Below are positions 32,620 through 58,082 of a stretch of DNA of 64,000 nucleotides, one piece after another (within the stretch, counting starts at the first letter, position 1; each line of letters opens with the position of its first letter). Made by a program: the position numbers and the translations under genes. The DNA comes from Amphiscolops sp. MND2022. Lineage: Eukaryota. The stretch lies in the NCBI GenBank assembly GCA_964187785.1, contig OZ076415.1, forward strand, positions 65,348,001-65,412,000, written 5' to 3'. The notes below the pieces were generated by a model. The model worked only from the letters and a program-made list of their open reading frames with translations. It did no database searches and was not told where the DNA came from.

Positions 32620-35198
32620 TTATCACCCAAGGTATCTCGAACAAATGTGAATCATTCTGCTTGAAACAGTTGATTTCTTTTTTCTGTTCTGATGAAAGTA
32701 GTTCTCGCTATACTCCGTCTTCCAGAATTCGCAGTGGAAACGTATCTGTCAACTAATGAGGACGATAACATGGAGTGACTTCCAACAACCCCAGGATCTT
32801 CAAGCGGGTCCTATTGAACTACACCACACCATTGGTGCAAAAACTACTGGATACCCCACCATCCGTAGCTCCTCTACTAACGTCTATCTCGCCGATCAAG
32901 TTAGTTCTAATCGCCAATCAGTTTTCATCTTTGTGTTGTGATCTTTTTCCCAAAATGGATATTTATCGAAGTCCAATAACTCAGTGGCTTCTTTATATCT
33001 GATCAAGATTTTCAGAATATTCCATTGAGTGCTGTTTTAGCATTTGAACCACTACAACTCTTTCTGCTCACCCTGTGTGATGGGAGGTCAGTTTCGAGGT
33101 GCATCCTCATGCCCGCTCACCCAGTATGTTGCAATCAGCCCGCTCACCATTTGATCTGCGAGGTCACCCTGTATACTGGGAGGTCAGTTTTGTGGGGCCT
33201 GCAGAGGCGGCAAACTTGGATCTTTCCGCCATGAACGTGTCACCAACCCCAGCGAGCAGATCAATATCTGCTACGACAACCCCCACTGGTTCCACGCCGC
33301 TCCGCAACATCATGCTGCTTCAGATCGCGTTCGCTCATCAATGCAGTCATTCAAACAAAAATATCTGTTGGTGAAAAATGAAACTGTCGAAGTTTGGTGT
33401 TCATTGATTGCTCTTGTTAAATTGAAAGTCGCATCTTTGCGTTGTAATTTTGCTGACTGTTTTGCTTCATATTTGTTTTTCTGCTTGCCTTATTATCATT
33501 TGTCACTTCATCTTTTAAAGATGGTTCCTTTGCTGCTCCTTTGTTGCTCTTGTTCATCAACTGCTTTTCCATCCAGCCAACTTTGATTTTGACTGCCCTT
33601 CATTTTCAGTCATTGGCTGGCCTGAGCTTGTTTTATTTTCATTCGCAAACTGTTTTGCTTAGCCTTAGATAATGATTGCTATTAATCTTTTTGCCATCAC
33701 CTCAACTGGTGCATTTAACTAACAGGAGAAAAAACTTTTGCAACGATCAGTTCTTTTTACTGTAGTAAACTTGTTTCAATCATGGGAATTGAGGCTCTTT
33801 TCTGTTTTTCTCCACCACCGATTTTTTCTGATAATAATTAAAGTGGTGTACAGTTTATAATCGATACAACACTCTTGTTTTGAGTCTCAATCATCAGTGA
33901 ATACGAACATGATATCAGTCAAAATGAGAGAATGTTGTTTCGTTTAAATAGAAAAAATATTCTAATAAACGTTACCCCTCATGAAAGGTTTCACTTTTAA
34001 TAGGCTAGTCTGGAAGTTCCAAACGTTAGAAAAGTCTTGTGGTGCGAAGAAAAAACAGAAAAGGGCCGCGATTGATTGCATAACATAGCGTTAATATTAG
34101 AGAAAAGTGTTTGCCAGTAAAACGCCAGAAGTGCTTTCTGCCCCAGCATAGCGCCAGTTGTAGTTGTAGTCATTTTCGTTTTAAAACTTAGTTGAAAATT
34201 GTCAGCAATGCTGTTTTTGTGTTCCAAAGAACATTCATTGGATGATCCCCGGAGAACCGTATTTTGATTTTCCGCGTTGTTTTTGATGTAAAACTTGTTG
34301 ATTTGAAAAAAACGGTATAACGCCAGATTTGGCATCCAGCAAAACGCCAGTAAGTAGTTGTAGTAGTAGTAGTAGTAGTATTGTTTGGTATAGTTTGTGT
34401 AGTTTGTATGAATTGTTTTAGGGAACTTTTTTCAAATTTTTTATCTTGTATATAGTATTTGTATATAGTGTTTGTGTATAGTAGTTTTATTAATTATTTC
34501 AAATGTATAAAGTGCAGATTAACTGTAATATGTTGTGTATAGTGTAAAATTTGTAATTTTTAAAAGGGCCGTTTCAAGTTGTTAATTTATTTGATGTCTT
34601 CCCCATGTTGGTTACGTTTTCGTCCGCACAATTTGGCCCCCCTCCTCCACTTTGATGGCTGCTCGACCAGGAAAGGCATTGCTTTTGCAATGTTTCATTC
34701 ATCTCTGTCTTTTGACTCAGGTTTTTTTGGGTTCTTCAAGGCGAGGAAGTTACCTGTCTACTCCAGAAGTACGTTGAGTTTGAATTCAGTGCTGACCAGT
34801 TTTACTTAACATTTATATACTGAAATTTGTTATATGCTCTTTGAAAATGTAACACTTGGAAATGTAAACGTTTTTGTTCTGTTATGTTACTTTTTATTCT
34901 TTATGTTAGGTTATTTTCTGTTCCAATCCTATAAACCCTAATAATTCATTTTACTTTAATTTAAAAACCTTAAACTGTATCTTAATTTTTTAAATCAGAA
35001 ATGGAAAATGTCTAGTGAAACTGTGATTGGCAGGTCATATTGTTAAGCCAGTGTTCCATCCCAGCTCAGGTAATTTGTTTTCAACCAGAGCATAAGTTTA
35101 GTGCATTGTTACAGATGGACGTCATTTCACGGAAATTCACATCGAGGAAGGTTAGAACTTTTTCAAAAAAATAAGTTGAACCCCGCGCACTGTGGCAG

Positions 35199-35845
35199 CT
35201 GAACGAACAGATCACTTCATTGATGAACCAACCCAGTGGTTTCTGGACCGCTGCCCAGGCGAGGTGGACAACATCACTCCTTGGTTTCAGTCACAGATTT
35301 CTTCGCAGAGGTGGCCGAACTTGGTGGTTAAAGTACGACTTCAAAAACGGTCTTTTTAAATTTTCGAACTGATGAAAAACTTCAATCATTCAAAACATCG
35401 AGATTGTTGATCGTTCTTTTTTCGCTCGAAAATGTCTGATTCTACCTAGTCAAGTTTGCTTACAGGCTTCTACAATTCCCAATGTCGGTGCTGGGCTCTT
35501 CGTCAGATGGCAGGCGTACAAGAAGAACAGTGCAGTCATAGATTACCATGGCAAGTACGTCCGCCAGAGCTCAGTCCGTCCGAGAAGCGGTGCGGACGAA
35601 ACGTACCACATGGAGCTACCCCCTACGTGCAGTATTGTTTTATGTAGATGCGAGCAATAAATGTTATCGTCCGTCATCAAATATTACCTAAAGGTCGTTA
35701 TATAAACCACTCGCACACACTAATCTATTTCCTGTTTCCTGTCTTCTTTCCCTGTAATTGTCATTTTTGCCTCTCGATATGTAAAAAAAGGGGGAAGGAA
35801 CTCTTCTTTCCGTACTCCTCCCACCACGATTTTGGTGCTACTTGA
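35199..35845 (+). pseudogene. SET-domain gene exons (first unit)
   Basis: Exon 35199-35332 (..WPNLVVK), a GT..AG phase-0 intron, then an exon from 35466: ASTIPNVGAGLFV, VIDYHG, YVDAS, GRYINHS and ELFFPY; frameshifted. Confidence 0.8.
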
Positions 35846-38800
35846 TTGTTTGTAAATATTAGAAAAGCAAAGAATAATAACAGCGTAAAAAAATGTATAG
35901 TATAGTAGTAGTAGTAGTAAAGCATTGGTAGAAAGTAATTGCGCTAAACAATGTATAGTATAGTAGAGTATAGTTTAGTAGTAGCAGTAGTATTGTTTGG
36001 TATAGTTTGTGTAGTTTGTATAAATTGTTTTAGGGAACTTTTTTCAAAGTTGTTTTCAATTTGTATATAGTATTTGTATATAGTGTTTGTGTATAGTAGT
36101 TTTATTAATTATTTCAAATGTATAAAGTGCAGATTAACTGTAATATGTTCTGTATAGTGTAAAGATTTAATTTCTTCAAAGGGCCGTTTCAAGTTGTTAA
36201 TTTATTTGATGTCTTCCCCATGTTGGTTACGTTTTCGTCCGCCCAATTTGGCCCCCCTCCTCCACTTTGATGGCTGCTCGACAAGGAAAGGCATTGCTTT
36301 TGCATTGTTTCATTCATCTCTGTCTTTTGACTCAGGTTTTTTTGGGTTCTTCAAGGCGAGGAAGTTACCTGTCTACTCCAGAAGTACTTCGAGTTTCAAT
36401 TCAGTGCTGACCAGTTTTACTTAACATTTATGTACTGAAATTTGTTATATGCTCTTTGGAAATGTAACACTTGGAAATGTAAACGTTTTTGTTCTGTTAT
36501 GTTACTTTTTATTCTTTATGTTAGGTTATTTTCTGTTCCAATCCTATAAACCCTAATAAATCATTTCACTTCAATTTAAAAACCTTAAACTGAATCTTAA
36601 TTTTTAAAAATCAGAAATGGAAAATGTCTAGAAAAACTGTGATTGGCAGGTCATATTGGTAAGCCAGTGTACCATCCCAGCTCAGATAATTTGTTTTCAA
36701 TCAGTGCATCAGTTTAGTGCATTATTACTGATGGACGTCATTTCACGGAAATTCACATCGAGGAATTTTAGAACTTTTTCAGGCGAGGTGGGCAAAATCA
36801 CTCCTTGGTTTCAGTCACAGATTTCTTCGCACAGGTGGCCGAACTTGGTGGTTAAAGTACGACTTCTCCAAAAACGGTCTTTTTATATTTTCGAACTGAT
36901 GAAAAACTTCAATCAATCAAAACACCGAGATTGTTAATCGTTCTTTTTTCGCTCGAAAATGTCTGAGTTTACCTAGTCAAGTTTGCTTACAGGCTTCTAC
37001 AATTCCCAATGTCGGTGCTGGGCTCTTCGTCAGATGGCAGGCGTACAAGAAGAACATTCCGGTCATAGATTACCATGGCAAGTACGTCCGCCAGAGCTCA
37101 GCCCGTCCGAGAAGCGATGTGGACGAAACGTACCACATGGAGTTACCCCCTACGTGCAGTATTTTTTTATGTAGATGCGAGCAATAAATGTTATAGCCCG
37201 TCATCAAATATTACCTAAAGGTCGTTATATAAACCACTCGCACACACTAGCTAATCTATTTCCTGTCTTCTTTCCTCTTCTTCTTTCCCTGTAGATGTCT
37301 TTTTTGCCTCTCGATCTATAAAAAAGGGGACGGAACTCTTCTTTCCGTACTCCTCCCATCAAAATTTTGGTGTTACTTGATTGTTTGTAAATATTAGAAT
37401 AGTAAAGAATGATAACAGCGTAATAATCATATGTATAGTATTGTACAGTATAGTAGTAGTAGCAAAGTATGGGTAGTAAGTAATTGCTTTAAGCATTGTA
37501 TAGAATAGTAGAGTATAGTTTAGTAGTAATATTGTTTTGTATAGTTTTTGTAGTTTGTATAAATTGTTTTAGGAAACTTTTTCAATTTTTTTAAAATTTG
37601 TATATAGTGTTTGTGTAAAGTAGTTTTAGTTATTGTTTCAAATGTATAAAGTGCAGATTAACTGTAATATGTTCTGTATAGTGTAAAAATTGTAATTTTA
37701 TTGAAGGGCCGTTTCAAGTTGTTAATTTATTTGATGTCTTTCCCATGTTGGTTACGTTTTCGTCCGCCCAATTCGGCCTCCTCATCCACTTTGATGGCTG
37801 CTCGACCAGGAAAGCCCTTGCTTTTGCAATGTTTCATTCACCTCTGTCTTTTGCCTCAAGTTTTTTTGGTCCCTTCAAGGCGAGGAAGTTACCTGTCTAC
37901 TCCAGAAGTACGTTGAGTATCAATTCAGTGCTGACCAGTTTTACTATACATTTATATAATAACATTTGTTATATGCTCTTTAGAAATGTAACACTTGGAA
38001 ATGTAAACGTTTTTGTTGTTGTAATTTTTTATTCTTTATGTTAGGTTATTTTCTGTTCCAATGTTGTTAAACCTAGTTATTCATTTTACTTTAATTCAAA
38101 AACCTTAAACTGAATCTTAATTTTTTAAAATCAGAAATGGAAAATGTCTAGGAAAACTGTGATTGGCAGGTCATATTGGTAAGCCATTGTTCCACCCCAG
38201 CTCAGATAATTTGTTTTCAACCAGTGCATCAGTTTAGTGCATTGTTACTGATGGACGTCATTTCACGGAAGTTCACATCGAGGAAGATTAGAACTTTTTC
38301 AAAAAACAAGTTGAACCCCTCGCACTGTGGCAGCTGAACGAACAGATCACTTCATTGATGAACCAACCCAGTGGTTTCTGAACCGCTGCCCAGGCGAGGT
38401 GAACAACATCACTCCTCGGTTTCAGTCACAGATTTCTTCGCAGAGGTGGCCGAACTTGGTGGTTAAAGTACGACTTCTTCAAAAACGGTCTTTTCAAATT
38501 TTCGAACTGATGAAAAACTTCAATCAATCAAAACATCGAGATTGTTGATCGTTCTTTTTTCGCTCGAAAATGTCTGATTTTACCTAGTCAAGTTTGCTTA
38601 CAGGCTTCTACAATTCCCAATGTCGGTGCTGGGCTCTTCGTCAGACGGCAGGCGTACAAGAAGAACAGTGCAGTCATAAATTACCACGGTAAGTACGTCC
38701 GCCAAAGCTCAGCCCGTCCGAGAAGCGGTGCGGACGAAACGTACCACATGGAGCTACCCCCTACGTGCAGTAATTGTTTTATATAGATGCGAGCAATAAA

Positions 38801-41800
38801 TGTTATCGTCATCAAATATTACCCAAAGGTCGTTATATAAACCACTCCCACACACTAGCTAATCTATTTCCTGTTTCCTGTCTTCTTTCCCTGAATCGTC
38901 TTTCTTGCCTCTCGATCTATAAAAAAGGGGAAGGACCTCTTCTTTCCGTACTCCTCCCATCACAATTTTGGTGCTACTTGATTGTTTGTAAATATTAGAA
39001 TAGTATAGAATGATAACAGCGTATTAATATGTATAGTATTGTATAGTATAGTAGTAGTAGCAAAGTATGGGTAGTAAGAAATTGCGTTAAGCAATGTATA
39101 GAACAGTATAGTTTAGGAGTAATATTGTTTTGTATAGTTTTGTAGTTTGTATAAATTGTTTGAGGAAACTTTTTCAGTTTTTTAAAATTTGTATATAGTG
39201 TTTGTGTATAGTAGTTTTAGTTATTGTTTCAAATGTATGAAGTGTAGATAAACTGTAATACTGTAATATGTTGTGTATAGTGTAAAATTTGTAAATTTTT
39301 GAGGGCAGTTTTAAGTTGTAAATTTATTTGATGTCTTTCCCATGTTGGTTACGTTTTCGTCCGCCCAATTCGGCCCCCTCCTCCACTTTGATGGCTACTC
39401 CACCAGGAAAGGCCTTGCTTTTGCAATGTTTCATTCACCTCTGTCTTTCGCCTCAAGTTTTTTTGGTACCTTCAAGGCGAGGAAGTTACCTGTCTACTCC
39501 AGAAGTACGTTGAGTATCAATTCAGTGCTGACCAGTTTTACTATAAATTTATATAATAACATTTGTTATATGCTCTTTGGAAATGTAACACTTGGAAATG
39601 TAAACGTTTTTGTTGTTGTTATTTTTTATTCTTTATGTTAGGTTATTTTCTGTTCCAATCTTGTTAAACCTAGTAATTCATTTTACTTTAATTCAAAAAC
39701 CTTAAACTGAATCCTAATTTTTTAAAATCAGAAATGGAAAATGTCTAGGAAAACTGTGATTGGCAGGTCATATTGGTAAGCCATTGTTCCACCCCAGCTC
39801 AGATAATTTGTTTTCAACCAGTGCATCAGTTTAGTGCATTGTTACTGATGGACGTCATTTTACGGAAGTTCACATCGAGGAAGGTTAGAACTTTTTCAAA
39901 AAACAAGTTGAACCCCTCGCACTGTGGCAGCTGAACGAACAGATCACTTCATTGATGAACCAACCCAGTGGTTTCTGGACCGCTGCCCAGGCGAGGTGAA
40001 CAACATCACTCCTCGTTTTCAGTCACAGATTTCTTCGCAGAGGTGGCCGAACTTGGTGGTTAAAGTACGTTTTCTTCAAAAACGGTCTTTTCAAATTTTC
40101 GAACTGATGAAAAACTTCAATCAATCAAAACATCGAGATTGTTGATCGTCCTTTTTTCGCTCGAAAATGTCTGATTTTACCTAGTCAAGTTTGCTGACAG
40201 GCTTCTACAATTCCCAATGTCGGTGCTGGGCTCTTCGTCAGACGGCAGGCGTACAAGAAGAACAGTGCAGTCATAAATTACCACGGTAAGTACGTCCGCC
40301 AAAGCTCAGCCCGTCCGAGAAGCGGTGCGGACGAAACGTACCACATGGAGCTACCCCCTACGTGCAGTAATTGTTTTATATAGATGCGAGCAATAAATGT
40401 TATCGTCATCAAATATTACCCAAAGGTCGTTATATAAACCACTCCCACACACTAGCTAATCTATTTCCTGTTTCCTGTCTTCTTTCCCTGAATTGTCTTT
40501 CTTGCCTCTCGATCTATAAAAAAGGGGAAGGACCTCTTCCTTCCGTACTCCTCCCATCACAATTTTGGTGCTACTTGATTGTTTACCTAGTCAAGTTTGC
40601 TTACAGGCTTCTACAATTCCCAATGTCGGTGCTGGACTCTTCGTCAGATGGCAGGCGTACAAGAAGAACAGTGCAGTCATAAATTACCATGGTAAGTATG
40701 TCCGCCAGAGCTCAGCCCGTCCGAGAAGCGGGCGAACGAAACGTACCACATGGAGCTACCCCCTACGTGCAGTAATTGTTTTATGTTGATGCGAGCAATA
40801 AATGTTATGGTCATCAAATATTACCTAAAGGTCGTTATATAAACCACTCCCACACACTAGCTAATCTATTTCCTGTTTCCTGTCTTCTTTCCCTGAATTG
40901 TCTTTCTTGCCTCTCGATCTATAAAAAAGGGGAAGGACCTCTTCTTTCCGTACTCCTCCCATCACAATTTTGGTGCTACTTGATTGTTTGTAAAGATTAG
41001 AATAGTATAGAATGATAACAGCGTATTAATAATATGTATAGTATAGTAGTAGTAGCAAAGTATGGGTAGTAAGTAATTGCGTTAAGCAATATATAGAATA
41101 GTAGAGTATAGTTTAGTAGTAATATTATTTAGTATAGTTTTTGTAGTTTGTATAAATTGTTTTAGGAAACTTTTTCAATTTTTTTAAAATTTGTATATAG
41201 TGTTTGTGTAAAGTAGTTTTAGTTTTTGTTTCAAATGTATAAAGTGCAGATTAACTGTAATATGTTCTGTATAGTGTAAAAATTGTAATTTTTTGAAGGG
41301 CCGTTTCAAGTTGTTAATTTATTTGATGTCCTTCCCATGTTGGTTACGTTTTCGTCCGCCCAATTCGGCCTCCTCATCCACTTTGATGGCTGCTCGACCA
41401 GGAAAGCCCTTGCTTTTGCAATGTTTCATTCACCTCTGTCTTTTGCCTCAAGTTTTTTTGGTCCCTTCAAGGCGAGGAAGTTACCTGTCTACTCCAGAAG
41501 TACGTTGAGTATCAATTCAGTGCTGACCAGTTTTACTATACATTTATATAATAACATTTGTTATATGCTCTTTAGAAATGTAACACTTGGAAATGTAAAC
41601 GTTTTTGTTGTTGTAATTTTTTATTCTTTATGTTAGGTTATTTTCTGTTCCAATGTTGTTAAACCTAGTAATTCATTTTACTTTAATTTAAAAACCTTAA
41701 ACTGAATCTTACTTTTTTTATCAGAAATGGAAAATGTTTAGGAAAACTGTGATTGGCAGGTCATATTGGTAAGCCAGTGTTCCATCCCAGCTCAGATAAT

Positions 41801-42169
41801 TTGTTTCCAATCAGTGCATCAGTTTAGTGCATGGTTACTGATGGACGTCATTTTACGGAAGTTCACATCGAGGAAGGTTAAAACTTTTTCAAAAAAATAA
41901 GTTGAACCCCTCGCACTGTGGCAGCTGAACGAACAGATCACTTCATTGATGAACCAACCCAGTGGTTTCTGGACCGCTGCCCAGGCGAGGTGGACAACAT
42001 CACTACTTGGTTTCAGTCACAGATTTCTTCGCAGAGGTGGCCGAACTTGGTGGTTAAATTACGACTTCAAAAACGGTCTTTTCAAATTTTCGAACTGATG
42101 AAAAACTTCAATCAATCAAAACATCGAGATTGTTGATCGTTCTTTTTTCGCTCGAAAATGTCTGATTTT

Positions 42170-45100
42170 ACCTAGTCAAGTTTGCTTACAGGCTTCTACA
42201 ATTCCCAATGTCGGTGCTGGGCTCTTCGTCAGATGGCAGGCGTACAAAAAGAACAGTGCAGTCATAGATTACCATGGCAAGTACGTCCGCCAGAGCTCAG
42301 TCCGTCCGAGAAGCGGTGCGGACGAAACGTACCACATGGAGCTACCCCCTACGTGCAGTATTTTTTAAATGTAGATGCGAGCAATAAATGTTATCGTCCG
42401 TCATCAAATATTACATAAAGGTCGTTGTATAAACCACTCGCACACACTAGCTAATCTATTTCCTGTTTCCTGTCTTCTTTCCTCTTCTTCTTTCCCTGTA
42501 ATTGTCTTTTTTGCCTCTCGATCTATAAAAAAAGGGGAAGGACCTCTTCCTTCCGTACTCCTCCCATCACAATTTTGGTGCTACTCGATTGTTTACCTTG
42601 TCAAGTTTGCTTACAGGCTTCTACAATTCCCAATGTCGGTGCTGGGCTCTTCGTCAGATGGCAGGCGTACAAGAAGAACAGTGCAGTCATAGATTACCAT
42701 GGTAAGTACGTCCGCCAGAGCTTGGCCCGTCCGAGAAGCAGTGCGGACGAAACGTACCACATGGAGCTACCCCCTACGTGCAGTAATTGTTTTATGTAGA
42801 TGCGAGCAAATGTTATCGTCATCAAATGTTACCTAAAGGTCGTTGTATAAACCACTCGCACACACTAGCTAATCTAGTTCCTGTTCCCTGTCTTCTTTCC
42901 TCTTCTTCTTTCCCTGTAATTGTCTTTTTTGCCTCTCGATCTATAAAAAGGGGAAGGACCTCTTCTTTCCGTACTCCTCCCATCACAATTTTGGTGCTAC
43001 TTGATTGTTAACCTTTTTTGCCTCTCGATCTATAAAAAAAGGGGAAGGACCTCTTCCTTCCGTACTCCTCCCATCACAATTTTGGTGCTACTCGATTGTT
43101 TACCTTGTCAAGTTTGCTTACAGGCTTCTACAATTCCCAATGTCGGTGCTGGGCTCTTCGTCAGATGGCAGGCGTACAAGAAGAACAGTGCAGTCATAGA
43201 TTACCATGGTAAGTACGTCCGCCAGAGCTCGGCCCGTCCGAGAAGCAGTGCGGACGAAACGTACCACATGGAGCTACCCCCTACGTGCAGTAATTGTTTT
43301 ATGTAGATGCGAGCAAATGTTATCGTCATCAAATGTTACCTAAAGGTCGTTGTATAAACCACTCGCACACACTAGCTAATCTAGTTCCTGTTCCCTGTCT
43401 TCTTTCCTCTTCTTCTTTCCCTGTAATTGTCTTTTTTGCCTCTCGATCTATAAAAAAGGGGAAGGACCTCTTCTTTCCGTACTTCTCCCATCACAATTTT
43501 GGTGCTACTTGATTGTTTACCTAGTCAAGTTTGCTTACAGGCTTCTACAATTCCCAATGTCGGTGCTGGGCTCTTCGTCAGATGGCAGGCGTACAAAAAG
43601 AACAGTGCAGTCATAGATTACCATGGCAAGTACGTCCGCCAGAGCTCAGTCCGTCCGAGAAGCGGTGCGGACGAAACGTACCACATGGAGCTACCCCCTA
43701 CGTGCAGTATTTTTTAAATGTAGATGCGAGCAATAAATGTTATCGTCCGTCATCAAATATTACATAAAGGTCGTTGTATAAACCACTCGCACACACTAGC
43801 TAATCTATTTCCTGTTTCCTGTCTTCTTTCCTCTTCTTCTTTCCCTGTAATTGTCTTTTTTGCCTCTCGATCTATAAAAAAAGGGGAAGGACCTCTTCCT
43901 TCCGTACTCCTCCCATCACAATTTTGGTGCTACTCGATTGTTTACCTTGTCAAGTTTGCTTACAGGCTTCAATTCCCAATGTCGGTGCTGGGCTCTTCGT
44001 CAGATGGCAGGCGTACAAGAAGAACAGTGCAGTCATAGATTACCATGGTAAGTACGTCCGCCAGAGCTTGGCCCGTCCGAGAAGCAGTGCGGACGAAACG
44101 TACCACATGGAGCTACCCCCTACGTGCAGTAATTGTTTTATGTAGATGCGAGCAAATGTTATCGTCATCAAATGTTACCTAAAGGTCGTTGTATTAACCA
44201 CTCGCACACACTAGCTAATCTAGTTCCTGTTCCCTGTCTTCTTTCCTCTTCTTCTTTCCCTGTAATTGTCTTTTTTGCCTCTCGATCTATAAAAAGGGGA
44301 AGGACCTCTTCTTTCCGTACTCCTCCCATCACAATTTTGGTGCTACTTGATTGTTTACCTTTTTTGCCTCTCGATCTATAAAAAAAGGGGAAGGACCTCT
44401 TCCTTCCGTACTCCTCCCATCACAATTTTGGTGCTACTCGATTGTTTACCTTGTCAAGTTTGCTTACAGGCTTCTACAATTCCCAATGTCGGTGCTGGGC
44501 TCTTCGTCAGATGGCAGGCGTACAAGAAGAACAGTGCAGTCATAGATTACCATGGTAAGTACGTCCGCCAGAGCTCGGCCCGTCCGAGAAGCAGTGCGGA
44601 CGAAACGTACCACATGGAGCTACCCCCTACGTGCAGTAATTGTTTTATGTAGATGCGAGCAAATGTTATCGTCATCAAATGTTACCTAAAGGTCGTTGTA
44701 TAAACCACTCGCACACACTAGCTAATCTAGTTCCTGTTCCCTGTCTTCTTTCCTCTTCTTCTTTCCCTGTAATTGTCTTTTTTGCCTCTCGATCTATAAA
44801 AAAGGGGAAGGACCTCTTCTTTCCGTACTTCTCCCATCACAATTTTGGTGCTACTTGATTGTTTACCTAGTCAAGTTTGCTTACAGGCTTCTACAATTCC
44901 CAATGTCGGTGCTGGGCTCTTCGTCAGATGGCAGGCGTACAAGAAGAACAGTGCAGTCATAGATTACCATGGCAAGTACCTCCGCCAGAGCTCAGTCCGT
45001 CCGAGAAGCGGTGCGGACGAAACGTACCACATGGAGCTACCCCCTACGTGCAGTATGTTTTTAATGTAGATGCGAGCAATAAATGTTATCGTCATCAAAT

Positions 45101-48100
45101 GTTACCTAAAGGTCGTTGTATAAACCACTCGCACATACTAGCTAATCTATTTCCTGTTCCCTGTCTTCTTTCCTCTTCTTCTTTCACTGTAATTGTCTTT
45201 TTTGCCTCTCGATCTATAAAAAAGGGGAAGGACCTCTTCTTTCCGTATTCCTTTCATCACAATTTTGGTGCTACTTGATTGTTTACCTAGTCAAGTTTGC
45301 TTACAGGCTTCTACAATTCCCAATGTCGGTGCTGGGCTCTTCGTCAGATGGCAGGCGTACAAGAAGAACAGTGCAGTCATAGATTACCATGGTAAGTACG
45401 TCCGCCAGAGCTCAGCCCGTCCGAGAAGCACTGCGGACGAAACGTACCACATGGAGCTACCCCCTACGTTCAGTAATTGTTTTATGTAGATGCGAGCAAT
45501 AAATGTTATCGTCATCAAATGTTACCTAAAGGTCGTTGTATAAACAACTCGCACACACTAGCTAATCTATTTCCTGTTCCCTGTCTTCTTTCCTCTTCTT
45601 CTTTCCCTGTAATTGTCTTTTTTGCCTCTCGATCTATAAAAAAGGGGAAGGACCTCTTCTTTCCGTACTCCTCCCATCACAATTTTGGTGCTACTTGATT
45701 GTTTACCTTGTCAAGTTTGCTTACAGGCTTCTACAATTCCCAATGTCGGTGCTGGGCTTTTCGTCAGATGGCAGGCGTACAAGAAGAACAGTGCAGGCAT
45801 AGATTACCATGGTAAGTACGTCCGCCAGAGCTCAGCCCGTCCGAGAAGCAGTGCGGACGAAACGTACATGGAGCTACCCCCTACGTGCAGTAATTGTTTT
45901 ATGTAGATGCGAGCAAATGTTATCGTCATCAAATGTTACCTAAAGGTCGTTGTATAAACCACTCGCACACACTAGCTAATCTAGTTCCTGTTCCCTGTCT
46001 TCTTTCCTCTTCTTCTTTCCCTGTAATTGTCTTTTTTGCCTCTCGATCTATAAAAAGGGGAAGGACCTCTTCTTTCCGTACTCCTCCCATCACAATTTTG
46101 GTGCTACTTGATTGTTTACCTTTTTTGCCTCTCGATCTATAAAAAAAGGGGAAGGACCTCTTCCTTCCGTACTCCTCCCATCACAATTTTGGTGCTACTC
46201 GATTGTTTACCTTGTCAAGTTTGCTTCTAGGCTTCTACAATTCCCAATGTCGGTGCTGGGCTCTTCGTCAGATGGCAGGCGTACAAGAAGAACAGTGCAG
46301 TCATAGATTACCATGGTAAGTACGTCCGCCAGAGCTCGGCCCGTCCGAGAAGCAGTGCGGACGAAACGTACCACATGGAGCTACCCCCTACGTGCAGTAA
46401 TTGTTTTATGTAGATGCGAGCAAATGTTATCGTCATCAAATGTTACCTAAAGGTCGTTGTATAAACCACTCGCACACACTAGCTAATCTAGTTCCTGTTC
46501 CCTGTCTTCTTTCCTCTTCTTCTTTCCCTGTAATTGTCTTTTTTGCCTCTCGATCTATAAAAAAGGGGAAGGACCTCTTCTTTCCGTATTCCTTTCATCA
46601 CAATTTTGGTGCTACTTGATTGTTTACCTAGTCAAGTTTGCTTACAGGCTTCTACAATTCCCAATGTCGGTGCTGGGCTCTTCGTCAGATGGCATGCGTA
46701 CAAGAAGAACATTGCAGTCATAGATTACCATGGTAAGTACGTCCGCCAGAGCTCAGCCCGTCCGAGAAGCACTGCGGACGAAACGTACCACATGGAGCTA
46801 CCCCCTACGTTCAGTAATTGTTTTATGTAGATGCGAGCAATAAATGTTATCGTCATCAAATGTTACCTAAAGGTCGTTGTATAAACAACTCGCACACACT
46901 AGCTAATCTATTTCCTGTTCCCTGTCTTCTTTCCTCTTCTTCTTTCCCTGTAATTGTCTTTTTTGCCTCTCGATCTATAAAAAAGGGGAAGGACCTCTTC
47001 TTTCCGTACTCCTCCCATCACAATTTTGGTGCTACTTGATTGTTTACCTTGTCAAGTTTGCTTACAGGCTTCTACAATTCCCAATGTCGGTCCTGGGCTT
47101 TTCGTCAGATGGCAGGCGTACAAGAAGAACAGTGCAGTCATAGATTACCATGGTAAGTACGTCCGCCAGAGCTCAGCCCGTCCGAGAAGCAGTGCGGACG
47201 AAACGTACCACACGGAGCTACCCCCTACGTGCAGTAATTGATTTATGTAGATGCGAGCAATAAATGTTATCGTCATCAAATGTTACCTAAAGGTCGTTGT
47301 ATAAACCACTCGCACACACTAGCTAATCTATTTCCTGTTCGTGTCTTCTTTCCTCTTCTTCTTTCCCTGTAATTGTCTTTTTTGCCTCTCGATCTATAAA
47401 AAGGGAAGGACCTCTTCTTTCCGTACTCCTCCCATCACAATTTTGGTGCTACTTGATTGTTTACCTAGTCAAGTTTGCTTACAGGCTTCTACAATTCCCA
47501 ATGTCGGTGCTGGGCTCTTCGTCAGATGGCAGGCGTACAAGAAGAACAGTGCAGTCATAGATTACCATGGCAAGTACGTCCGCCAGAGCTCAGTCCGTCC
47601 GAGAAGCGGTGCGGACGAAACGTACCACATGGAGCTACCCCCTACGTGCAGTATTTTTTTAATGTAGATGCGAGCAATAAATGTTATCGTCCGTCATCAA
47701 ATATTACCTAAAGGTCGTTGTATAAACCACTCGCACACACTAGCTAATCTATTACCTGTTTCCTGTCTTCTTTCCTCTTCTTCTTTCCCTGTAATTGTCT
47801 TTTTTGCCTCTCGATCTATAAAAAAGGGGAAGGACCTCTTCTTTCCGTACTCCTCCCATCACAATTTTGGTGCTACTTGATTGTTTACCTTGTCAAGTTT
47901 GCTTACAGGCTTCTACAATTACTAATGTCGGTGCTGGGCTCTTCGTCAGATGGCAGGCGTACAAGAAGAACAGTGCAGTCATAAATTACCATGGTAAGTA
48001 CGTCCGCCAGAGCTCAGCCCGTCCGAGAAGCAGTGCGGACGAAACGTACCACATGGAGCTACCCCCTACGTGCAGTAATTGTTTTATGTAGATGCGAGCA

Positions 48101-49540
48101 ATAAATGTTATCGTCATCAAATGTTACCTAAAGGTCGTTGTATAAACCACTCGCACACACTAGCTAATCTAGTTCCTGTTCCCTGTCTTCTTTCCTCTTC
48201 TTCTTTCCCTGTAATTGTCTTTTTTGCCTCTCGATCTATAAAAAAGGGGAAGGACCTCTTCTTTCCGTACTCCTCCCATCACAATTTTGGTGCTACTTGA
48301 TTGTTTACCTAGTCAAGTTTGCTTACAGGCTTCTACAATTGTCAATGTCGGTGCTGGGCTCTTCGTCAGATGGCAGGCGTACAAGAAGAACAGTGCAGTC
48401 ATAGATTACCATGGTAAGTACGTCCGCCAGAGCTCAGCCCGTCCGAGAAGCAGTGCGGACGAAACGTACCACATGGAGCTACCCCCTACGTGCAGTAATT
48501 GTTTTATGTAGATGCGAGCAATAAAAGTTATCGTCATCAAATGTTACCTAAAGGTCGTTGTATAAACCACTCGCACACACTAGCTAATCTATTTCCTGTT
48601 CCCTGTCTTCTTTCCTCTTCTTCTTTCCCTGTAATTGTCTTTTTTGCCTCTCGATCTATAAAAAAGGGGAAGGACCTCTTCTTTCCGTACTCCTCCCATC
48701 ACAATTTTGGTGCTACTTGATTGTTTACCTTGTCAAGTTTGCTTACAGGCTTCTACAATTCCCAATGTCGGTGCTGGGCTTTTCGTCAGATGGCAGGCGT
48801 ACAAGAAGAACAGTGCAGTCAAAGATTACCATGGTAAGTACGTCCGCCAGAGCTCAGCCCGTCCGAGAAGCAGTGCGGACGAAACGTACCACATGGAGCT
48901 ACCCCCTACGTGCAGTAATTGATTTATGTAGATGCGAGCAATAAATGTTATCGTCATCAAATGTTACCTAAAGGTCGTTATATAAACCACTCGCACACAT
49001 TAGCTATTCTATTTCCTGTTTCCTGTCTTCTTTCCCTGAATTGTCTTTCTTGCCTCTCGATCTATAAAAAAGGGGAAGGACCTCTTCTTTCCGTACTCCT
49101 CCCATCACAATTTTGGTGCTACTTGATTGTTTACCTTGTCAAGTTTGCTTACAGGCTTCTACAATTCCCAATGTCGGTGCTGGGCTCTTCGTCAGATGGC
49201 AGGCGTACAAGAAGAACAGTGCAGTCATAGATTACCGTGGTAAGTACGTCCGCCAGAGCTCAGCCCGTCCGAGAAGCAGTGCGGACGAAACGTACCACAT
49301 GGAGCTACCCCCTAGGTGCAGTAATTGTTTTATGTAGATGCGAGCAATAAATGTTATCGTAATCAAATGTTACCTAAAGGTCGTTATATAAACCACTCGC
49401 ACACACTAGCTAATCTATTTCCTGTTTCCTGTCTTCTTTCCCTGAATTGTCTTTCTTGCCTCTCGATCTATAAAAAAGGGGATGGACCTCTTCTTTCCGT
49501 ACTCCTCTTATCACAATTTTCGTGCTACTTGATTGTTTGT
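42170..49540 (+). repeat. ~420-bp satellite (17 monomers) equal to the SET exon, with a ~1.34-kb trimeric higher-order structure
   Basis: Repeated ORF fragments in the track at ~420-bp spacing; ~500-bp long variants near 43000, 44350 and 46110; offsets of 1341-1349 bp between matching variants. Confidence 0.93.
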
Positions 49541-49693
49541 AAATATTAGAATACTATAGAATGATAACAGCGTAATAATAATATCTATAGTATTGTAGAG
49601 TATAGTAGTAGTTGCAAAGTATGGGTTGTAAGTAATTGCGTTAAGCAATGTATAGAATAACAGAGTATAGTTTAGTAGGTGTATTGTTTAGTA

Positions 49694-50080
49694 AGTATAT
49701 TTGATTTTGATTTTGATTGTCATATCTCCGACTTCGTAGAAATCAATCCTTCCAGTCGCGAGGGTCCCTTCATCTTACCAAGTATTAGATACGAGCTGCA
49801 ACGGTCCAATTACTGGTATCGTACATGCCATCGTGCGAATCTAATATGGAATAAAGTGTGTTTCTGGAAACCAGAAGGACTAAAAGGAAGAATTCTGAAC
49901 CTCATGTGGATTTATTTCAATAACTTTTTCAACGACCATTCAACCTGCACCTGGACTTTCATTTGTCTTTGTAACTTTTGTCGACTTCGAAACCCCATCT
50001 CTGAACTCTAGACTGTGTCATATTGGGAGAAATCCCTTCGCTTATGCGTAAATTCTTGAAAATAATAATAATAATAATAT
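49694..50080 (+). mobile_element. 5'-truncated CR1/L2-like LINE fragment
   Basis: Reading frame ends ...NLIWNKV...CTWTFICLCNFC, typical of CR1/L2 ORF2 C-termini; (AAT)n tail at 50061-50080; imperfect ~28-bp flanking duplication GAGTATAGTTTAGTA..TATTGTTTAGTA. Confidence 0.65.
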
Positions 50081-50335
50081 AGTTGAGTATAGTTTAGTAA
50101 TATTGTTTAGTATAGTTTTTGTAGTTTGTATAAATTGTTTTAGGAAACTTTTTCATTTTTTTATATTTGTATATAGTGTTTGTGTATAGAAGTTTTAACA
50201 ATTGTTCCAAATGTATAAAGTGTAGATAAACTGTAATACTGTAATATGTTGTGTATAGTGTAAAATTTGTGAATTTTTTTGAGGACAGTTTTAAGTTGTA
50301 AATTTATTTGATGTCTTCCCCATGTTGGTTACGTT

Positions 50336-50661
50336 AGTAGTTAAGATTTCAGCCGGCCTTTCAACGGGGGGGGGGGTCCTCGGTTTTCACGGGGTGGGTC
50401 CTTGCTCTGAAATTTTAGGACCTATCCCTAAAAGGAAGGGGTCCTTCCAAATTGGTGTTCGGAAATACTTCGGCTTTTGACTGCGAAAGTAAATTATTGG
50501 TCGGATTATTTTTGTATTCGTTTTTGGATTTTTGCGAAAGTACATGTAAAAGCGTAGACACTCTTGTTTATTCTTTGAATGCCTGAAAGTTTGGAAAGTA
50601 CTAACCTTGAAATTTTGTTGTAATTGAATTGTAAAGCTGGATTGACTAATACTGGTACAAC
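50336..50661. repeat. Left TIR (326 bp)
   Basis: Reverse complement of 62581-62933. Confidence 0.93.
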
Positions 50662-50888
50662 AACTAAGTCGGGTTGTAGTATTGTTGTGCCAAGCGATCG
50701 ATCGGCCAATAAAAAGTAATCTAGTTTGTCGTATAATTCACACCAAAGTTTAATAGGGTACGAGAGGGTGTGAAATTTATGTACAGTTTTGTTCGAATGC
50801 ATTATTCGTCTGATGTTACGAACGTGTTTTGATAAAAATTCATTATAAAGGAAATATCAGCAGCAGGAAGGAATGCTGAGAATCAAAA

Positions 50889-51305
50889 TTGGAAATGGAC
50901 CCCCAAAAAATAGACGTTGTAAAAGTGCAGCAAACTTTTCATAGACTTTCATTAGACAATTCGGACAAATTCGAAACTTATCAAAAGTATGTGCTAAGTT
51001 TTTGTTTGGTATATCTAAAAAATTGCAACTTCAACAACATTACTTTGGACCATTTGAAATATTTGCTGAAAGAAGAACCAGAAATCAAATGTGAAATTTT
51101 CTACAAGTATTGCAAAGTGTACAGATTATTTGTGATTGTTCGCGACTCGCAAGAGCTTATGGGGACGTTTAGTGACGTGTGTGACTGCTTGGATAGAAGA
51201 ACCAGATTGCAAAAGTTTTGGTCATGCTCAGTTCGCCCTCTCTGGAGCATTTTGAAACTCAAATATTCAGCACAAGCCCACTGGTTCCGTGAATTGGAAT
51301 GTTGA
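50889..51305 (+). CDS. Maverick hypothetical protein, 138 aa
   Basis: First ORF of a compact co-oriented gene run; its stop overlaps the next ATG. Confidence 0.55.
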   Translation: MEMDPQKIDVVKVQQTFHRLSLDNSDKFETYQKYVLSFCLVYLKNCNFNNITLDHLKYLLKEEPEIKCEIFYKYCKVYRLFVIVRDSQELMGTFSDVCDCLDRRTRLQKFWSCSVRPLWSILKLKYSAQAHWFRELEC

Positions 51306-51868
51306 ATGAGAACGAAATTCTTGTTATTGACTTTGAAGGGTTTGACTACAACGGTCTTATCGTTAAAGAGCTGAGCGTTCACAGTAAAAATTATCAAGAA
51401 ACCCTACTTTTTAAACCTCCTCAAGCCTTTTCCACAATTTCAACTATTAACCGCGACTCGATAATATTCTTAACAAAAAGAATACACGGTATTGACTGGG
51501 ACAGTGGCGTTTACCCTTACACTTCTATCCATAATTATTTGGCCAGTTTACGACTTTGTTTTCCCAACGCAATTGTTTTTGTCGACGGACATGTGAAGAG
51601 AGCATTTATCTCCAACTATTTTAAAAAAGTTTACATTTTGCAAAGACTTGGTTGTCCCCCAATTAAACATTTATGTGTTAATGCTGTGGTTTCTTGTGGG
51701 AACCACGCAAACTTTCTCCCATGGAATAGTCAACAAAAACATTTCTGGCATTGCAGCAAATTGAAAACTGCTGTTGCTTATCAGTGGTTAGAGAGTAGGC
51801 GCAATGCAAACCAATCAAAAGTTGACTCCAAACTTGAGCGTCTGTGTGTAGGCTGTTCCAAACAATAG
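51299..51868 (+). CDS. DEDD-like exonuclease-fold protein
   Basis: VIDFEGF...VKEL and HGIDWDSG pattern, as seen in animal Maverick accessory genes. Confidence 0.6.
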   Translation: MLNENEILVIDFEGFDYNGLIVKELSVHSKNYQETLLFKPPQAFSTISTINRDSIIFLTKRIHGIDWDSGVYPYTSIHNYLASLRLCFPNAIVFVDGHVKRAFISNYFKKVYILQRLGCPPIKHLCVNAVVSCGNHANFLPWNSQQKHFWHCSKLKTAVAYQWLESRRNANQSKVDSKLERLCVGCSKQ

Positions 51869-51872
51869 TGGT

Positions 51873-52217
51873 GTGGTGGAAGCAAGCAGGACTTTTGGAA
51901 AGAATATGTCAGTAGCTTCTAGTGCACGAGACTCAAAACTGTCCAGGATGAAAAAGAAACTACCTCCTTTAAACATGCACATTTCCAGGCCACCTCCTCC
52001 TGTCGAAATTGACAAAAATTGCCCGAATCTACCACAAGAAGTGAGGGACGTAGTCAAATCCAAAAGTGTCCTCAGAATTTGGTTCTATTACGGATCTGGG
52101 AAAACTGGCTCAAAATTCAAAATCGATTTGGAAACAAAAGATAAAGAATGGAATTCATTTATAATGCTGGAAACCCAAAGAATATTCGTCTTACCAAGGA
52201 GCAAAAGTTTGAACTGA
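51873..52217 (+). CDS. Maverick hypothetical protein, 114 aa
   Basis: Co-oriented ORF abutting the previous one; no motif. Confidence 0.4.
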   Translation: MVEASRTFGKNMSVASSARDSKLSRMKKKLPPLNMHISRPPPPVEIDKNCPNLPQEVRDVVKSKSVLRIWFYYGSGKTGSKFKIDLETKDKEWNSFIMLETQRIFVLPRSKSLN

Positions 52218-52552
52218 CTTTTTGTGTGATTTGATATAATGCTTTTTTTGTTTTGAAACTAACTCTCTCTGTAGTGTAGTCCTTCGGTGCCTCAATGGCA
52301 AGAAAAATCTTGTCTCTGCACCTTAACCTACCTCAACATTGACAGCCAACAAAAAACTTGTGTAAACGACACACAAGGTCCGGCACGTACTAAGGAAACA
52401 ATGCATGATGTTCCGCAGTACAATTCTTTTGTATCTTTTGTACTAACATTTTATTTAACAATTTTGAACCATTTCTGATATACAACGTGTGTGTAATAAT
52501 GTACAATTAATTGGAATTGAATTTAATAATTTCGTAGTACACTTTTTGAAAA

Positions 52553-52831
52553 ATGGGTTCAGAAACAGTTGATTTACCAGACGTATTATCATGTCAAGAA
52601 ATTGTGTTCGATAAAGAGAATAACGAGAGACCAGCCTGGAAATTTTGTTTTGCTACAAACATACCACGATCGCAAGTTATATTTTTTGTTCATGTATTCT
52701 CAGCTTTCTTTGTGATAACAATTTGTCTGGTGAAACTAATCTTTTTTGAAGTATCATGTGAAGACATGCCATTTTGGACATCACTTTTGGCTGGATCAGT
52801 TGGATATCTTTTACCTAGCCCAAAATTATGA
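52553..52831 (+). CDS. Small two-TM membrane protein typical of Polintons
   Basis: Two hydrophobic segments and C-terminal WTSLLAGSVGYLLPSP; ATGA overlap with the ATPase. Confidence 0.7.
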   Translation: MGSETVDLPDVLSCQEIVFDKENNERPAWKFCFATNIPRSQVIFFVHVFSAFFVITICLVKLIFFEVSCEDMPFWTSLLAGSVGYLLPSPKL

Positions 52832-53553
52832 ACAAAATCATTTTTACTACAGAAAGAGTTTTCATGTCAGTTGTTGGACCATCTGGATCTGGAAAAACCC
52901 GACTGATTTTTTCTATGCTCACATCCAAGACCTTTTATCCACGCTTTCAAAAAATTTACTACTTTTATCGCGAGTTCCAACAAATTTTCAAAGAAGTGGA
53001 AAAACGGATGAACATCGAGTTTATCAGTTGTCTAGATTTTGATTTGATAAAGACGCTTCAGGAGTGTTTGCTGATATTTGACGACTCTTGCGAAGAAATT
53101 TACCAAGATAAAAACTTTGCAAAAATTGCAGTCTCTGGCCGACACAGAGGAATTAACTGTATTTTTGTCAAACATAATTTGTATCATCAAAGTAAGTGGT
53201 CACGTACAATTGACCTCAACACAACCCACATTATTCTTTTTAATTCTCCTCGTGACACACAGCAAATTGAATATCTTGGAAGACAATTAAACAAAGCTGT
53301 ATTTCTAAAAGAGTGCTACACAGACGCTGTTGCAGAACCACATGGTCATTTACTCATTGATTTGGATCCAAAGACAAGTGAATGTCTACGCTTTTGTTCA
53401 AACATTGTAGGACCAGGACCAACAATATTTTATTTGCCTTCGTCACAAGCAAAAATTACAGAAATTAACAATGAGCGAGAAAAATTTGCATACACTCAGT
53501 CTCTTGGAAAAACTCACTTCAGTACAGCAACAAAAACTTCTACGACATTGTGA
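52828..53553 (+). CDS. DNA-packaging ATPase (A32/FtsK-HerA family)
   Basis: Walker A GPSGSGKT, Walker B LLIFDD, GRH and HNLY..SK.SRTI motifs. Confidence 0.92.
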   Translation: MNKIIFTTERVFMSVVGPSGSGKTRLIFSMLTSKTFYPRFQKIYYFYREFQQIFKEVEKRMNIEFISCLDFDLIKTLQECLLIFDDSCEEIYQDKNFAKIAVSGRHRGINCIFVKHNLYHQSKWSRTIDLNTTHIILFNSPRDTQQIEYLGRQLNKAVFLKECYTDAVAEPHGHLLIDLDPKTSECLRFCSNIVGPGPTIFYLPSSQAKITEINNEREKFAYTQSLGKTHFSTATKTSTTL

Positions 53554-53773
53554 CAAGGAATTTTTGAAATTTTGTTGCGAGTGTGCAATCAATGTTGTGA
53601 ATGGAACGGTTGGTATCAACGTGGACGAATTAAAACAGTACGAAATCCAACTCAGATTACTTTGTAAAAGGTCTACCTCCAATAAGGAACGCAGAAAAAT
53701 TTTAATGTCACCAAAAGGTCTCAAATTGTTAAACTTTATTATTCGGCCTTGTTTCTGTTACCTGACAGATTGA
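53471..53773 (+). CDS. Conserved Polinton hypothetical protein
   Basis: ECAINVVNG.V pattern; position after the ATPase. Confidence 0.6.
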   Translation: MSEKNLHTLSLLEKLTSVQQQKLLRHCDKEFLKFCCECAINVVNGTVGINVDELKQYEIQLRLLCKRSTSNKERRKILMSPKGLKLLNFIIRPCFCYLTD

Positions 53774-56545: not shown

Positions 56546-56784
56546 CAGTGAGTCCTCAAATTGTGACGCCTGATAGCACTCGAACTGCAGCGTTGGAGCC
56601 ACCACCAGTGAAGAAGGTAAAACAGCAGGAAAAGAAACTTTTGAAGCGATTCTAACCAATCTAACAAATACTGTCAAAAGCTTACTAACCAATCTAACCA
56701 AATACTGTCAAAAGCTTACTAACCACGTCGAAATTTGAAGACATTTTATGCAGAGTTCTGTTTAAAGTAGCCTAGGAAATCGTT

Positions 56785-58010: not shown

Positions 58011-58082
58011 CCTTAATTGATCGGAGCGAAGTGCAAAAACATTTTCTCAATCTCAACATTGAGGAACACTCGACTTTCCAAA

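What the first reader, a model, noticed from the sequence alone, without database searches (positions are those of the whole stretch)
35199..49549. A satellite DNA born from a SET-domain exon
Seen: splicing 35332 to 35466 gives WPNLVVK|ASTIPNVGAGLFV. The same exon then carries DYHG, YVDAS, GRYINHS and VFFASRSIKKG.(E/D)LFFPY, the ordered hallmarks of a SET domain. The ~420-bp monomer is exactly this exon plus its 3' splice site, and I count 22 copies, all apparently frameshifted. Inference: a methyltransferase-like gene was first amplified as 1.6-kb units and then converted into a satellite. This gives a rare snapshot of gene-to-satellite birth, and the array could yield small RNAs against intact paralogs.
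Basis: partly seen in the sequence, partly recalled or inferred. Interest (0 to 1): 0.8.

Follow-up and report, generated by a model that had tools for sequence, protein, structure and literature searches.

The report
Tandem array of a dead SET-domain exon
A broken copy of a small methyltransferase-like (SET-domain) gene was copied head to tail, first as 1.6-kb gene units and then as 22 copies of its last exon alone. It is a tidy but small, single-locus example of a repeat array growing out of a gene, with no sign that it does anything.

Summary
Between 35443 and 49547 there are 22 full monomers of 406-426 bp plus three 87-bp remnants, all on the + strand. Each monomer is 23 nt of intron end, the whole last coding exon through its stop codon, and about 8 nt of 3' flank. 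The exon is of SET-domain origin. Stop-free C-terminal halves of several monomers pass Pfam SET's own threshold (22.8-27.1 bits against a cutoff of 22.4), and intact relatives score 38-39 bits.

All 22 copies share one 1-bp deletion, and the 1.6-kb units share one roughly 740-bp exon-1 deletion, so a dead gene copy was amplified. Variation inside the array is neutral: 30/25/26 variable sites at codon positions 1/2/3. The 1.6-kb units are older (89-94% identical). The 420-bp array is younger and grows by multi-monomer blocks; two 1.35-kb blocks are 99.6% identical.

A second assembly of what appears to be the same sample reproduces the structure. However, the array is about 14 kb, 22 copies and one locus, so it is a seed-sized tandem array, not an established satellite.

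The small-RNA idea has no support. No RNA runs were found, all copies lie in the sense orientation, and only six 21-mers are shared with the one intact paralogue in this assembly.

Verdict: a new member of a known kind, of modest interest.

The parts
34364..35165 (+). Left-most partial unit: 3' flank plus upstream region (spacer positions 116-921). No monomer lies to its left.
   Evidence: 95% identity to the spacer 35861-36969. Upstream of 34364 the sequence is mostly unique, with one dispersed repeat.
35178..35332 (+). Tail of exon 1 (last 52 codons, ...RWPNLVVK) in unit 1. The same tail lies at 38315-38470, 39912-40067 and 41906-42061, and is shortened to 26 codons at 36782-36859.
   Evidence: tblastn with P0002 and P0003. 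The deletion breakpoint is shared by the units.
35333..35465 (+). 133-bp intron (GT...AG, phase 0). Its last 23 nt belong to the repeated monomer.
   Evidence: The position is conserved in the C5 paralogue and in L063.
35443..42168 (+). The 1.6-kb unit phase. Monomers at 35443, 36970, 38581 and 40178+40584 (a doublet) are each followed by a 1.1-kb spacer. The spacer is 3' flank, then upstream region, then exon-1 tail, then intron.
   Evidence: units 89-94% identical.
42169..49547 (+). Uninterrupted 420-bp array: 17 full monomers and three 87-bp remnants, all head to tail.
42169..44863 (+). Two copies of a 1.35-kb higher-order block (type A monomer, type B monomer, 87-bp remnant, type B monomer), 99.6% identical to each other.
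   Evidence: The pair 45284/46625 is also 99.5% identical, and 42594-43517 matches 45704-46624 at 98.5%.
43015..43101 (+). 87-bp remnant: a monomer with about 320 bp deleted internally. The same piece lies at 44361-44447 and 46122-46208.
44928..45275 (+). Longest ATG-started open frame in the array (116 aa, equals P0005). The N-terminal part is out of frame and the C-terminal part is the SET half.
   Evidence: Pfam SET scores 26.2 bits. The frame is not open in the other monomers.
49548..50335 (+). 3' flank of the last unit, about 78% identical to the other spacers, ending at the transposon insertion.
50336..62932 (+). 12.6-kb Polinton/Maverick-like transposon inserted into the spacer. It has terminal inverted repeats and a TTACGT(T) target duplication.
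   Evidence: junctions compared with the uninterrupted spacer; rve integrase, A32-like ATPase; copies 94-99% identical elsewhere in the genome.
62933..64000 (+). Next unit of the same tandem gene array: upstream region (62933-63481) and a full-length exon 1 starting at 63675. It runs out of the window to about 64375, with the intron reaching about 64508. It has no SET exon.
   Evidence: Homology stops at the 3' splice site, where a dispersed repeat begins.

Best explanation
This is a locally amplified pseudogene. One member of a small, lineage-restricted, tandemly arranged two-exon gene family was the source; exon 1 has no known domain and exon 2 is a KMT5A-like SET domain. That member lost about 740 bp of exon 1, including the start codon, and suffered a 1-bp deletion in the SET exon.

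The dead 1.6-kb unit was then duplicated in tandem to five or six copies, presumably by unequal exchange. Within one unit, a short segment became a tandem doublet. The segment comprises 23 nt of intron end, the SET exon and about 8 nt past the stop codon. The doublet formed at a microhomology: TGATTGTTT just past the stop codon and TGATTTT in the intron.

Unequal exchange among these 420-bp copies then expanded the array, most recently in 1.35-kb multi-monomer blocks. The copies drift neutrally.

Shown: the anatomy, the shared lesions, the single origin, the neutrality and the relative ages. Inferred: the molecular mechanism (slippage or unequal exchange) and the absence of function.
For: - SET origin. 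The intact paralogue exon on C5 scores 38.2 bits on Pfam SET. The intact L063 exon (P0004) scores 39.1 bits. Open monomer halves score 22.8-27.1 bits. tblastn of P0004 against the monomers gives E values of 1e-43 to 1e-63 for most copies and weaker values for the three oldest.
- Shared founding lesions. The 1-bp deletion is present in all 22 copies. The exon-1 deletion breakpoint is identical in units 1, 3, 4 and 5.
- Single origin. The 22 monomers form one clade (support 100/97), excluding both intact relatives. The genome has no other copies above 73% identity.
- Neutrality. Variable sites fall 30/25/26 at codon positions 1/2/3, and the synonymous fraction is 0.247 against 0.224 expected at random. 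Differences from the intact relative fall 13/6/19, which points to constraint before the gene died.
- Ages. The 1.6-kb units are 89-94% identical, the array blocks 98.5-99.6%.
- Junction. Every monomer-monomer junction reads GATTGTT(T)ACCT, and the microhomology is visible in the parental unit.
- Not an artefact of one assembler. Contig ctg184316 of ENA assembly ERZ25074608 matches 20.35 kb across the array except for one 2-bp indel. Logan contigs from two samples carry the monomer subtype variants, including the 4-bp indel, and both the monomer-to-spacer and monomer-to-monomer continuations.
Against: - No long reads and no read depth could be examined, so copy number and order rest on two assemblies of what is probably one data set.
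- No RNA or small-RNA data exist for this organism in the tools, so 'no function' is an inference from neutrality and from the lack of a conserved open frame.
- The type B monomers keep the ancestral state at both subtype indels. The order of events is therefore more tangled, by gene conversion or exchange between units, than a simple two-step story.
- Summed contig word depth in the second sample was relatively higher over the monomer. That could mean copy-number variation, but the tool warns this figure is not a copy number.
Confidence: 0.85

Rival explanations
1. The array is a regulatory pseudogene cluster. It would be transcribed, possibly spliced from the exon-1-tail donor onto one of the 22 retained acceptors, and processed into small RNAs that silence intact family members, as Su(Ste) does to Stellate.
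For: Every monomer keeps its polypyrimidine tract and CAG acceptor, and the 1.6-kb units keep an upstream region and a splice donor. The array shares 82 21-mers with the intact L063 gene. L063 lies in an assembly that also contains this genome's own contigs.
Against: No RNA run was found. All copies are in the sense orientation, so there is no hairpin or built-in antisense. Only six 21-mers, one 26-nt block, are shared with the only intact paralogue in this assembly. Sequence drift is neutral, including at the acceptor (one copy has CTAG, one GACAG).
Confidence: 0.06
2. The array is an assembly artefact: over-expansion or mis-joining of a few nearly identical copies.
For: The 1.35-kb blocks are 99.6% identical, which is the kind of repeat that assemblers get wrong. 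All the data come from one study.
Against: A second assembly reproduces all 25 pieces with a single 2-bp difference. Monomers differ by diagnostic indels and substitutions that also appear in Logan contigs of two samples. That contig's coverage label (97x) resembles other host contigs at 101x and 123x, which argues against a gross collapse.
Confidence: 0.05
3. The repeat is cargo or an internal tandem repeat of a mobile element that captured a gene fragment, so it spreads by transposition rather than by local duplication.
For: The locus sits between a Gypsy-like retroelement and a Polinton-like element.
Against: The monomer occurs nowhere else in the 1.07-Gb genome above 73% identity. The Polinton is a clean later insertion into the spacer, with its own target duplication. 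The retroelement ends more than 10 kb to the left. The units continue on the far side of the Polinton.
Confidence: 0.02

Closest known systems
Duplicated terminal exons and pseudogene arrays of Drosophila Y-linked genes (extra copies of kl-2 exons 8-12; PCKR/Su(Ste) arrays derived from CK2-beta-like genes), PMC8794474
   Same: Partial gene copies, often the 3'-terminal exons, are amplified in tandem next to or away from the parent gene. Many of them are pseudogenes.
   Different: Those lie on a non-recombining Y chromosome, reach tens to hundreds of copies, and Su(Ste) is a demonstrated piRNA source. Here there are 22 copies on a large chromosome-scale contig. Sex linkage is unknown and there is no RNA evidence.
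Satellite DNA seeded from other repeats (rDNA intergenic spacer, transposable-element parts), as reviewed in PMC5615363
   Same: A pre-existing functional sequence serves as the seed. Monomers of a few hundred bp are arranged head to tail, with higher-order repeat blocks and neutral drift.
   Different: That review names rDNA spacers and transposable elements as seeds. Its text holds the word 'exon' once, in a reference title (as 'exonuclease'), and in the passages retrieved no protein-coding exon is named as a seed. The array here is far below the size and copy number of an established satellite.
KMT5A/SET8 (PR-Set7) type SET-domain methyltransferases
   Same: A short SET domain without cysteine-rich pre- or post-SET regions. 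The motif order is GxG, YHG, (V/I)DA, R.INHS, GEEL...Y. PDB KMT5A chains align over residues 4-123 of the 138-aa intact exon.
   Different: The similarity is weak (E about 0.01, and EHMT1/2 score similarly). Exon 1 has no recognised domain. The nearest named relatives are uncharacterised multi-copy 'SET domain-containing' proteins of teleost fishes at 31-37% identity. Orthology to KMT5A is not shown.
Human gene-containing macrosatellites (D4Z4/DUX4, RS447/USP17) - from my own knowledge, not checked here
   Same: Tandem arrays whose repeat unit derives from a protein-coding gene.
   Different: Those units are 3-5 kb and carry whole open reading frames, some of them functional. Here the unit is a single broken exon.

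Membership tests
SET domain (Pfam PF00856) origin of the monomer | Profile match at or above Pfam's gathering score | tested here: met
   Open C-terminal halves of monomers score 27.1, 26.7, 25.9, 24.8 and 22.8 bits against a cutoff of 22.4, matching profile positions 50-104 of 105. P0005 scores 26.2 bits. The intact relatives score 38.2 and 39.1 bits. Degraded copies (unit 1, type C) fall below the threshold.
SET domain (Pfam PF00856) origin of the monomer | Ordered motifs: GxG, Y-x-G, NHS, ELxF/Y..Y | tested here: met
   GAGLF, IDYHG, R(Y/C)INHS and G(E/K)(E/D)LFFPY are read in this order, across two frames, in the monomers, and in one frame in the intact exons.
Functional SET methyltransferase gene | Uninterrupted reading frame with a start codon and both exons | tested here: not met
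   The 1-bp deletion is shared by all 22 copies. Exon 1 is reduced to 52 codons without a start codon in the 1.6-kb units and is absent in the 420-bp array.
Satellite DNA | Head-to-tail monomers with higher-order repeat structure | tested here: met
   The 420-bp period holds over 7.4 kb, and the 1.35-kb blocks are 99.6% identical.
Satellite DNA | High copy number and long arrays, usually at several loci or in heterochromatin | tested here: not met
   There are 22 copies at one locus spanning about 14 kb. The 1.07-Gb assembly has no other copies above 73% identity. Chromatin state is not testable here.
Satellite DNA | Non-coding, neutrally evolving sequence | tested here: met
   Variable sites fall 30/25/26 at the three codon positions, and the synonymous fraction is 0.247 against 0.224 expected.
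Su(Ste)-like small-RNA-producing pseudogene array | Small RNAs or antisense transcripts from the array | not testable with these tools
   No RNA run holds the sequence. Read laying returned only assembled contigs.
Su(Ste)-like small-RNA-producing pseudogene array | High nucleotide identity to an intact target gene | tested here: inconclusive
   Six 21-mers are shared with the intact C5 gene and 82 with the L063 gene. The genome of origin of L063 is uncertain.

The most novel reading that the evidence does not exclude
The array is a seed-stage satellite that is still expanding and varies in copy number between individuals. It may also be transcribed and spliced from the retained donor and acceptor sites into RNAs that act on the intact L063-type SET gene. 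That would make it a Stellate/Su(Ste)-like system caught at birth outside Drosophila.
Probability: 0.06. Interest if true: 0.6.

Novelty: new member of a known kind. Interest (0 to 1): 0.3.

Why it matters
Most satellites are too old and too homogenised for their origin to be read. At this locus every step remains legible:
- the intact relatives of the source gene;
- the two lesions that killed the gene copy;
- the 1.6-kb gene-unit phase;
- the microhomology at which an exon-sized piece first doubled;
- the recent higher-order blocks.

That makes it a useful teaching or benchmark case for how tandem arrays nucleate from unique sequence, and a candidate locus for measuring array growth between individuals. 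It does not open a new mechanism. Partial-gene tandem amplification is well documented, and there is no evidence that this array has any cellular role.

Tried and rejected
- Pfam on the three frame pieces of the first, most decayed monomer gave nothing. The better-preserved monomers had to be used instead.
- Exon 1 of the family has no Pfam domain and only three database relatives, all from the same ENA assembly or the window itself.
- Source gene in this genome. The only open SET exon with an open exon 1 is on C5, at 66% amino-acid identity. The C9 tandem copies are frameshifted. The C6 hits are partial, and the C11 and second C5 hits carry stops or cover only part of the exon.
- The closest intact gene (L063, 85-87% nucleotide identity) is not in this assembly, and its flanks are not syntenic with the window. 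The best flank matches are 77-78%, to C9 and C8. It therefore cannot be called the parent locus.
- Sequencing runs. Both searches returned four runs of one study, none recorded as RNA.
- Read laying returned only short assembled contigs, so depth, long-range order and expression could not be judged.
- Mobile-element capture was rejected.
- The first call to the search of earlier findings was not yet open. Later look-ups held nothing on this array.
- The literature searches did not turn up a satellite explicitly derived from a SET-domain exon. This is not an exhaustive search.
Full report
**What is there**

The window is G000:C7:65,348,001-65,412,000 of a 1.07-Gb eukaryotic assembly. A BLAST of one monomer against the window finds 22 full copies of 406-426 bp between 35443 and 49547, plus three 87-bp remnants, all on the + strand. 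TRF reports a 420-bp period.

The first five copies (35443, 36970, 38581, 40178+40584, 42169) are separated by a 1.1-kb spacer, which gives 1.6-kb units. From 42169 to 49547 the copies abut.

**What the monomer is**

I aligned the monomers with two intact relatives: the exon on C5 (L029:1513-1926) and the exon on ENA contig L063. Each monomer consists of:
- the last 23 nt of a 133-bp intron (polypyrimidine tract plus CAG);
- the complete last coding exon (396 nt including the TGA stop);
- about 8 nt beyond the stop.

The GT at 35333 and the AG at 35465 join ...WPNLVVK to ASTIPNVGAGLF in phase 0. The same junction is present in both intact relatives.

The intact exons hit Pfam SET at 38.2 and 39.1 bits against a cutoff of 22.4. 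Stop-free C-terminal halves of array monomers hit it directly at 27.1, 26.7, 25.9, 24.8 and 22.8 bits. A gene caller's ORF from the array (P0005, equal to 44928-45275) scores 26.2 bits.

Solved KMT5A/SET8 chains align over nearly the whole exon, but only weakly (E about 0.01), and EHMT1/2 score similarly. 'KMT5A-like' describes the architecture; it is not a claim of orthology.

**The family**

Exon 1 (about 215-235 aa) has no recognised domain and almost no database relatives. The SET exon has only 39 hits at E ≤ 0.001 among 1.8 billion cluster representatives. The nearest named ones are uncharacterised multi-copy SET proteins of teleost fishes at 31-37% identity.

Within this genome the family sits in small clusters on C5, C9, C11, C6 and C7. 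Only the C5 copy at 68,444,303 has both exons open. The three C9 copies, spaced 1.9 kb apart, are frameshifted.

**The amplified thing was already dead**

All 22 monomers share a 1-bp deletion between ...ELPPTCS and YVDAS relative to both intact exons. Two copies have lost 2 bp at that point.

Further indels define subtypes:
- Type A has a 4-bp CGTC insertion: 35443, 36970, 42169, 43518, 47462.
- Type C has a 14-bp deletion: 38581, 40178, 40584, 48726, 49132.
- Type B is the rest.

In three type A monomers (42169, 43518, 47462) the two indels sum to +3, so the frame returns, but with stops in between. Monomer 36970 also ends in its starting frame, through further indels.

The 1.6-kb units keep only the last 52 codons of exon 1. 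The breakpoint of the roughly 740-bp deletion is identical in units 1, 3, 4 and 5, and unit 2 has a further 90-bp loss. In a tree the 22 monomers form one clade (100/97) that excludes both intact relatives.

Variation inside the array is spread evenly over codon positions (30/25/26). Its synonymous fraction is 0.247 against a random expectation of 0.224. Differences from the intact relative are biased in the way expected of a once-constrained gene, at 13/6/19. This is neutral drift of a pseudogene.

**Order and mode of growth**

The 1.6-kb units are 89-94% identical. Within the array, a 1,349-bp block (A, B, 87-bp remnant, B; 42169-43517) recurs at 43518-44863 at 99.6% identity. Part of it recurs again at 45704-46624 at 98.5%. 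The gene-unit phase is therefore older and the exon-only phase younger, and the array currently grows by multi-monomer blocks.

The two phases overlap in time. Unit 4 already carries a doublet (40178+40584), and it is homologous to the last two monomers of the array (48726+49132) at 95.6% identity.

Every monomer-monomer junction reads GATTGTT(T)|ACCT. In the parental unit the sequence just past the stop codon is TGATTGTTT|GTAAAT, and the intron reads TGATTTT|ACCTAG. This is consistent with a first duplication at a microhomology. The mechanism itself (slippage, template switch or unequal exchange) is inferred.

**The wider locus**

The 3' flank of the last unit ends at 50335, where a 12.6-kb element begins. 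That element has terminal inverted repeats, an rve integrase and an A32-like ATPase. The spacer resumes at 62933 after a TTACGT(T) target duplication. It is a Polinton/Maverick-like insertion from a young family whose other copies are 94-99% identical.

Beyond it lies one more unit with a full-length exon 1 (63675 to about 64375, frameshifted near its start) and the intron. Homology stops at the 3' splice site, where a dispersed repeat begins, and no SET exon follows within 7.5 kb.

The whole stretch from 34364 to about 64.5 kb is therefore one decayed tandem gene array.

**Is it real?**

A contig from ENA assembly ERZ25074608 (ctg184316, 300 kb) matches 20.35 kb across the array, with all 25 pieces, apart from one 2-bp indel. 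That assembly also contains a contig 100% identical to this genome's C5 locus. It is most likely a second assembly of the same sample, so it provides an independent assembler but not independent data.

Logan contigs of four runs from two samples of one study carry the subtype variants. They also carry both monomer-to-spacer and monomer-to-monomer continuations. Long-read spanning could not be tested.

**Function**

No run recorded as RNA holds the sequence. All copies are in the sense orientation. The array shares only six 21-mers with the intact C5 gene, in one 26-nt block, although it shares 82 with the L063 gene.

The flanks of L063 match this genome only at 77-78% or less. Whether that gene belongs to this species is therefore open. 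The small-RNA idea remains untested and, on present evidence, unlikely.

**Comparison and verdict**

Tandem amplification of partial genes and terminal exons is well documented, as are pseudogene arrays such as PCKR/Su(Ste), for example on Drosophila Y chromosomes (PMC8794474). A review of satellite origins names rDNA spacers and transposable elements as seeds (PMC5615363).

This locus adds a protein-coding exon as the seed, with unusually legible intermediate steps. But at 22 copies and one locus it is a seed-sized array, not an established satellite. I rate it a new member of a known kind, interest 0.3.

Noticed in passing
window 50336-62932: A 12.6-kb Polinton/Maverick-like element. It has terminal inverted repeats (AGTAGTTAAGATTTCAGCCGG...), a TTACGT(T) target duplication, an rve integrase, an A32-like ATPase and a 1411-aa ORF without a Pfam hit. 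Its first ~870 bp, the only part searched, recurs at many other loci in the genome at 94-99% identity, so the family is young.
   Followed up: partly
window 9355-22919, minus strand: An LTR-type retroelement with RT, RNase H and integrase, a 715-aa ORF that hits the Monjiviricetes fusion glycoprotein family (114.6 bits), and a MATH/TRAF-domain ORF.
   Followed up: partly
L031:1675-2700 (= C7:65,411,675-65,412,700; starts at window 63675): The last unit of the gene array keeps a full-length exon 1 and the intron, but homology ends exactly at the 3' splice site. There a dispersed, SINE-like repeat begins, with many copies at 80-86% identity. This is the mirror image of the array, which has SET exons without exon 1.
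   Followed up: partly
L063 (ENA ERZ25074608 ctg183087, gene at 5297-6543): An intact two-exon gene (P0002 + P0004), 85-87% identical to the array. It lies in an assembly that also holds contigs identical to this genome, yet the locus is absent from G000 and its flanks match G000 at 78% or less. It could be a missing haplotype or region, or a co-sampled relative.
   Followed up: partly
L063:8567-10970: An unrelated tandem repeat with a period of about 518 bp lies next to the intact gene in the ENA contig.
   Followed up: no
G000:C9:17,054,479-17,058,912: Three tandem 1.9-kb copies of the same gene family carrying both exons, all frameshifted. This is a second, smaller pseudogene array of the family. 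The upstream flank of L063 resembles the flank of this locus at 78% identity.
   Followed up: partly
P0007 and cluster members (Dissostichus eleginoides, one 312-kb contig): The most similar named proteins belong to runs of adjacent multi-SET 'hypothetical proteins' in teleost fishes (also Channa striata and goodeids). This hints that this kind of SET gene is prone to tandem amplification in other lineages as well.
   Followed up: no
window 41900-42660 in runs X1-X4: Summed contig word depth over the monomer, relative to the spacer, was about 2.5-5 times in three runs of sample S1 and about 6-18 times in the run of sample S2. This may reflect copy-number difference between individuals, but the tool states this figure is not a copy number.
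   Followed up: no
window 32067-32294: A run of 228 N lies 2 kb to the left of the array. It was left as it is.
   Followed up: no
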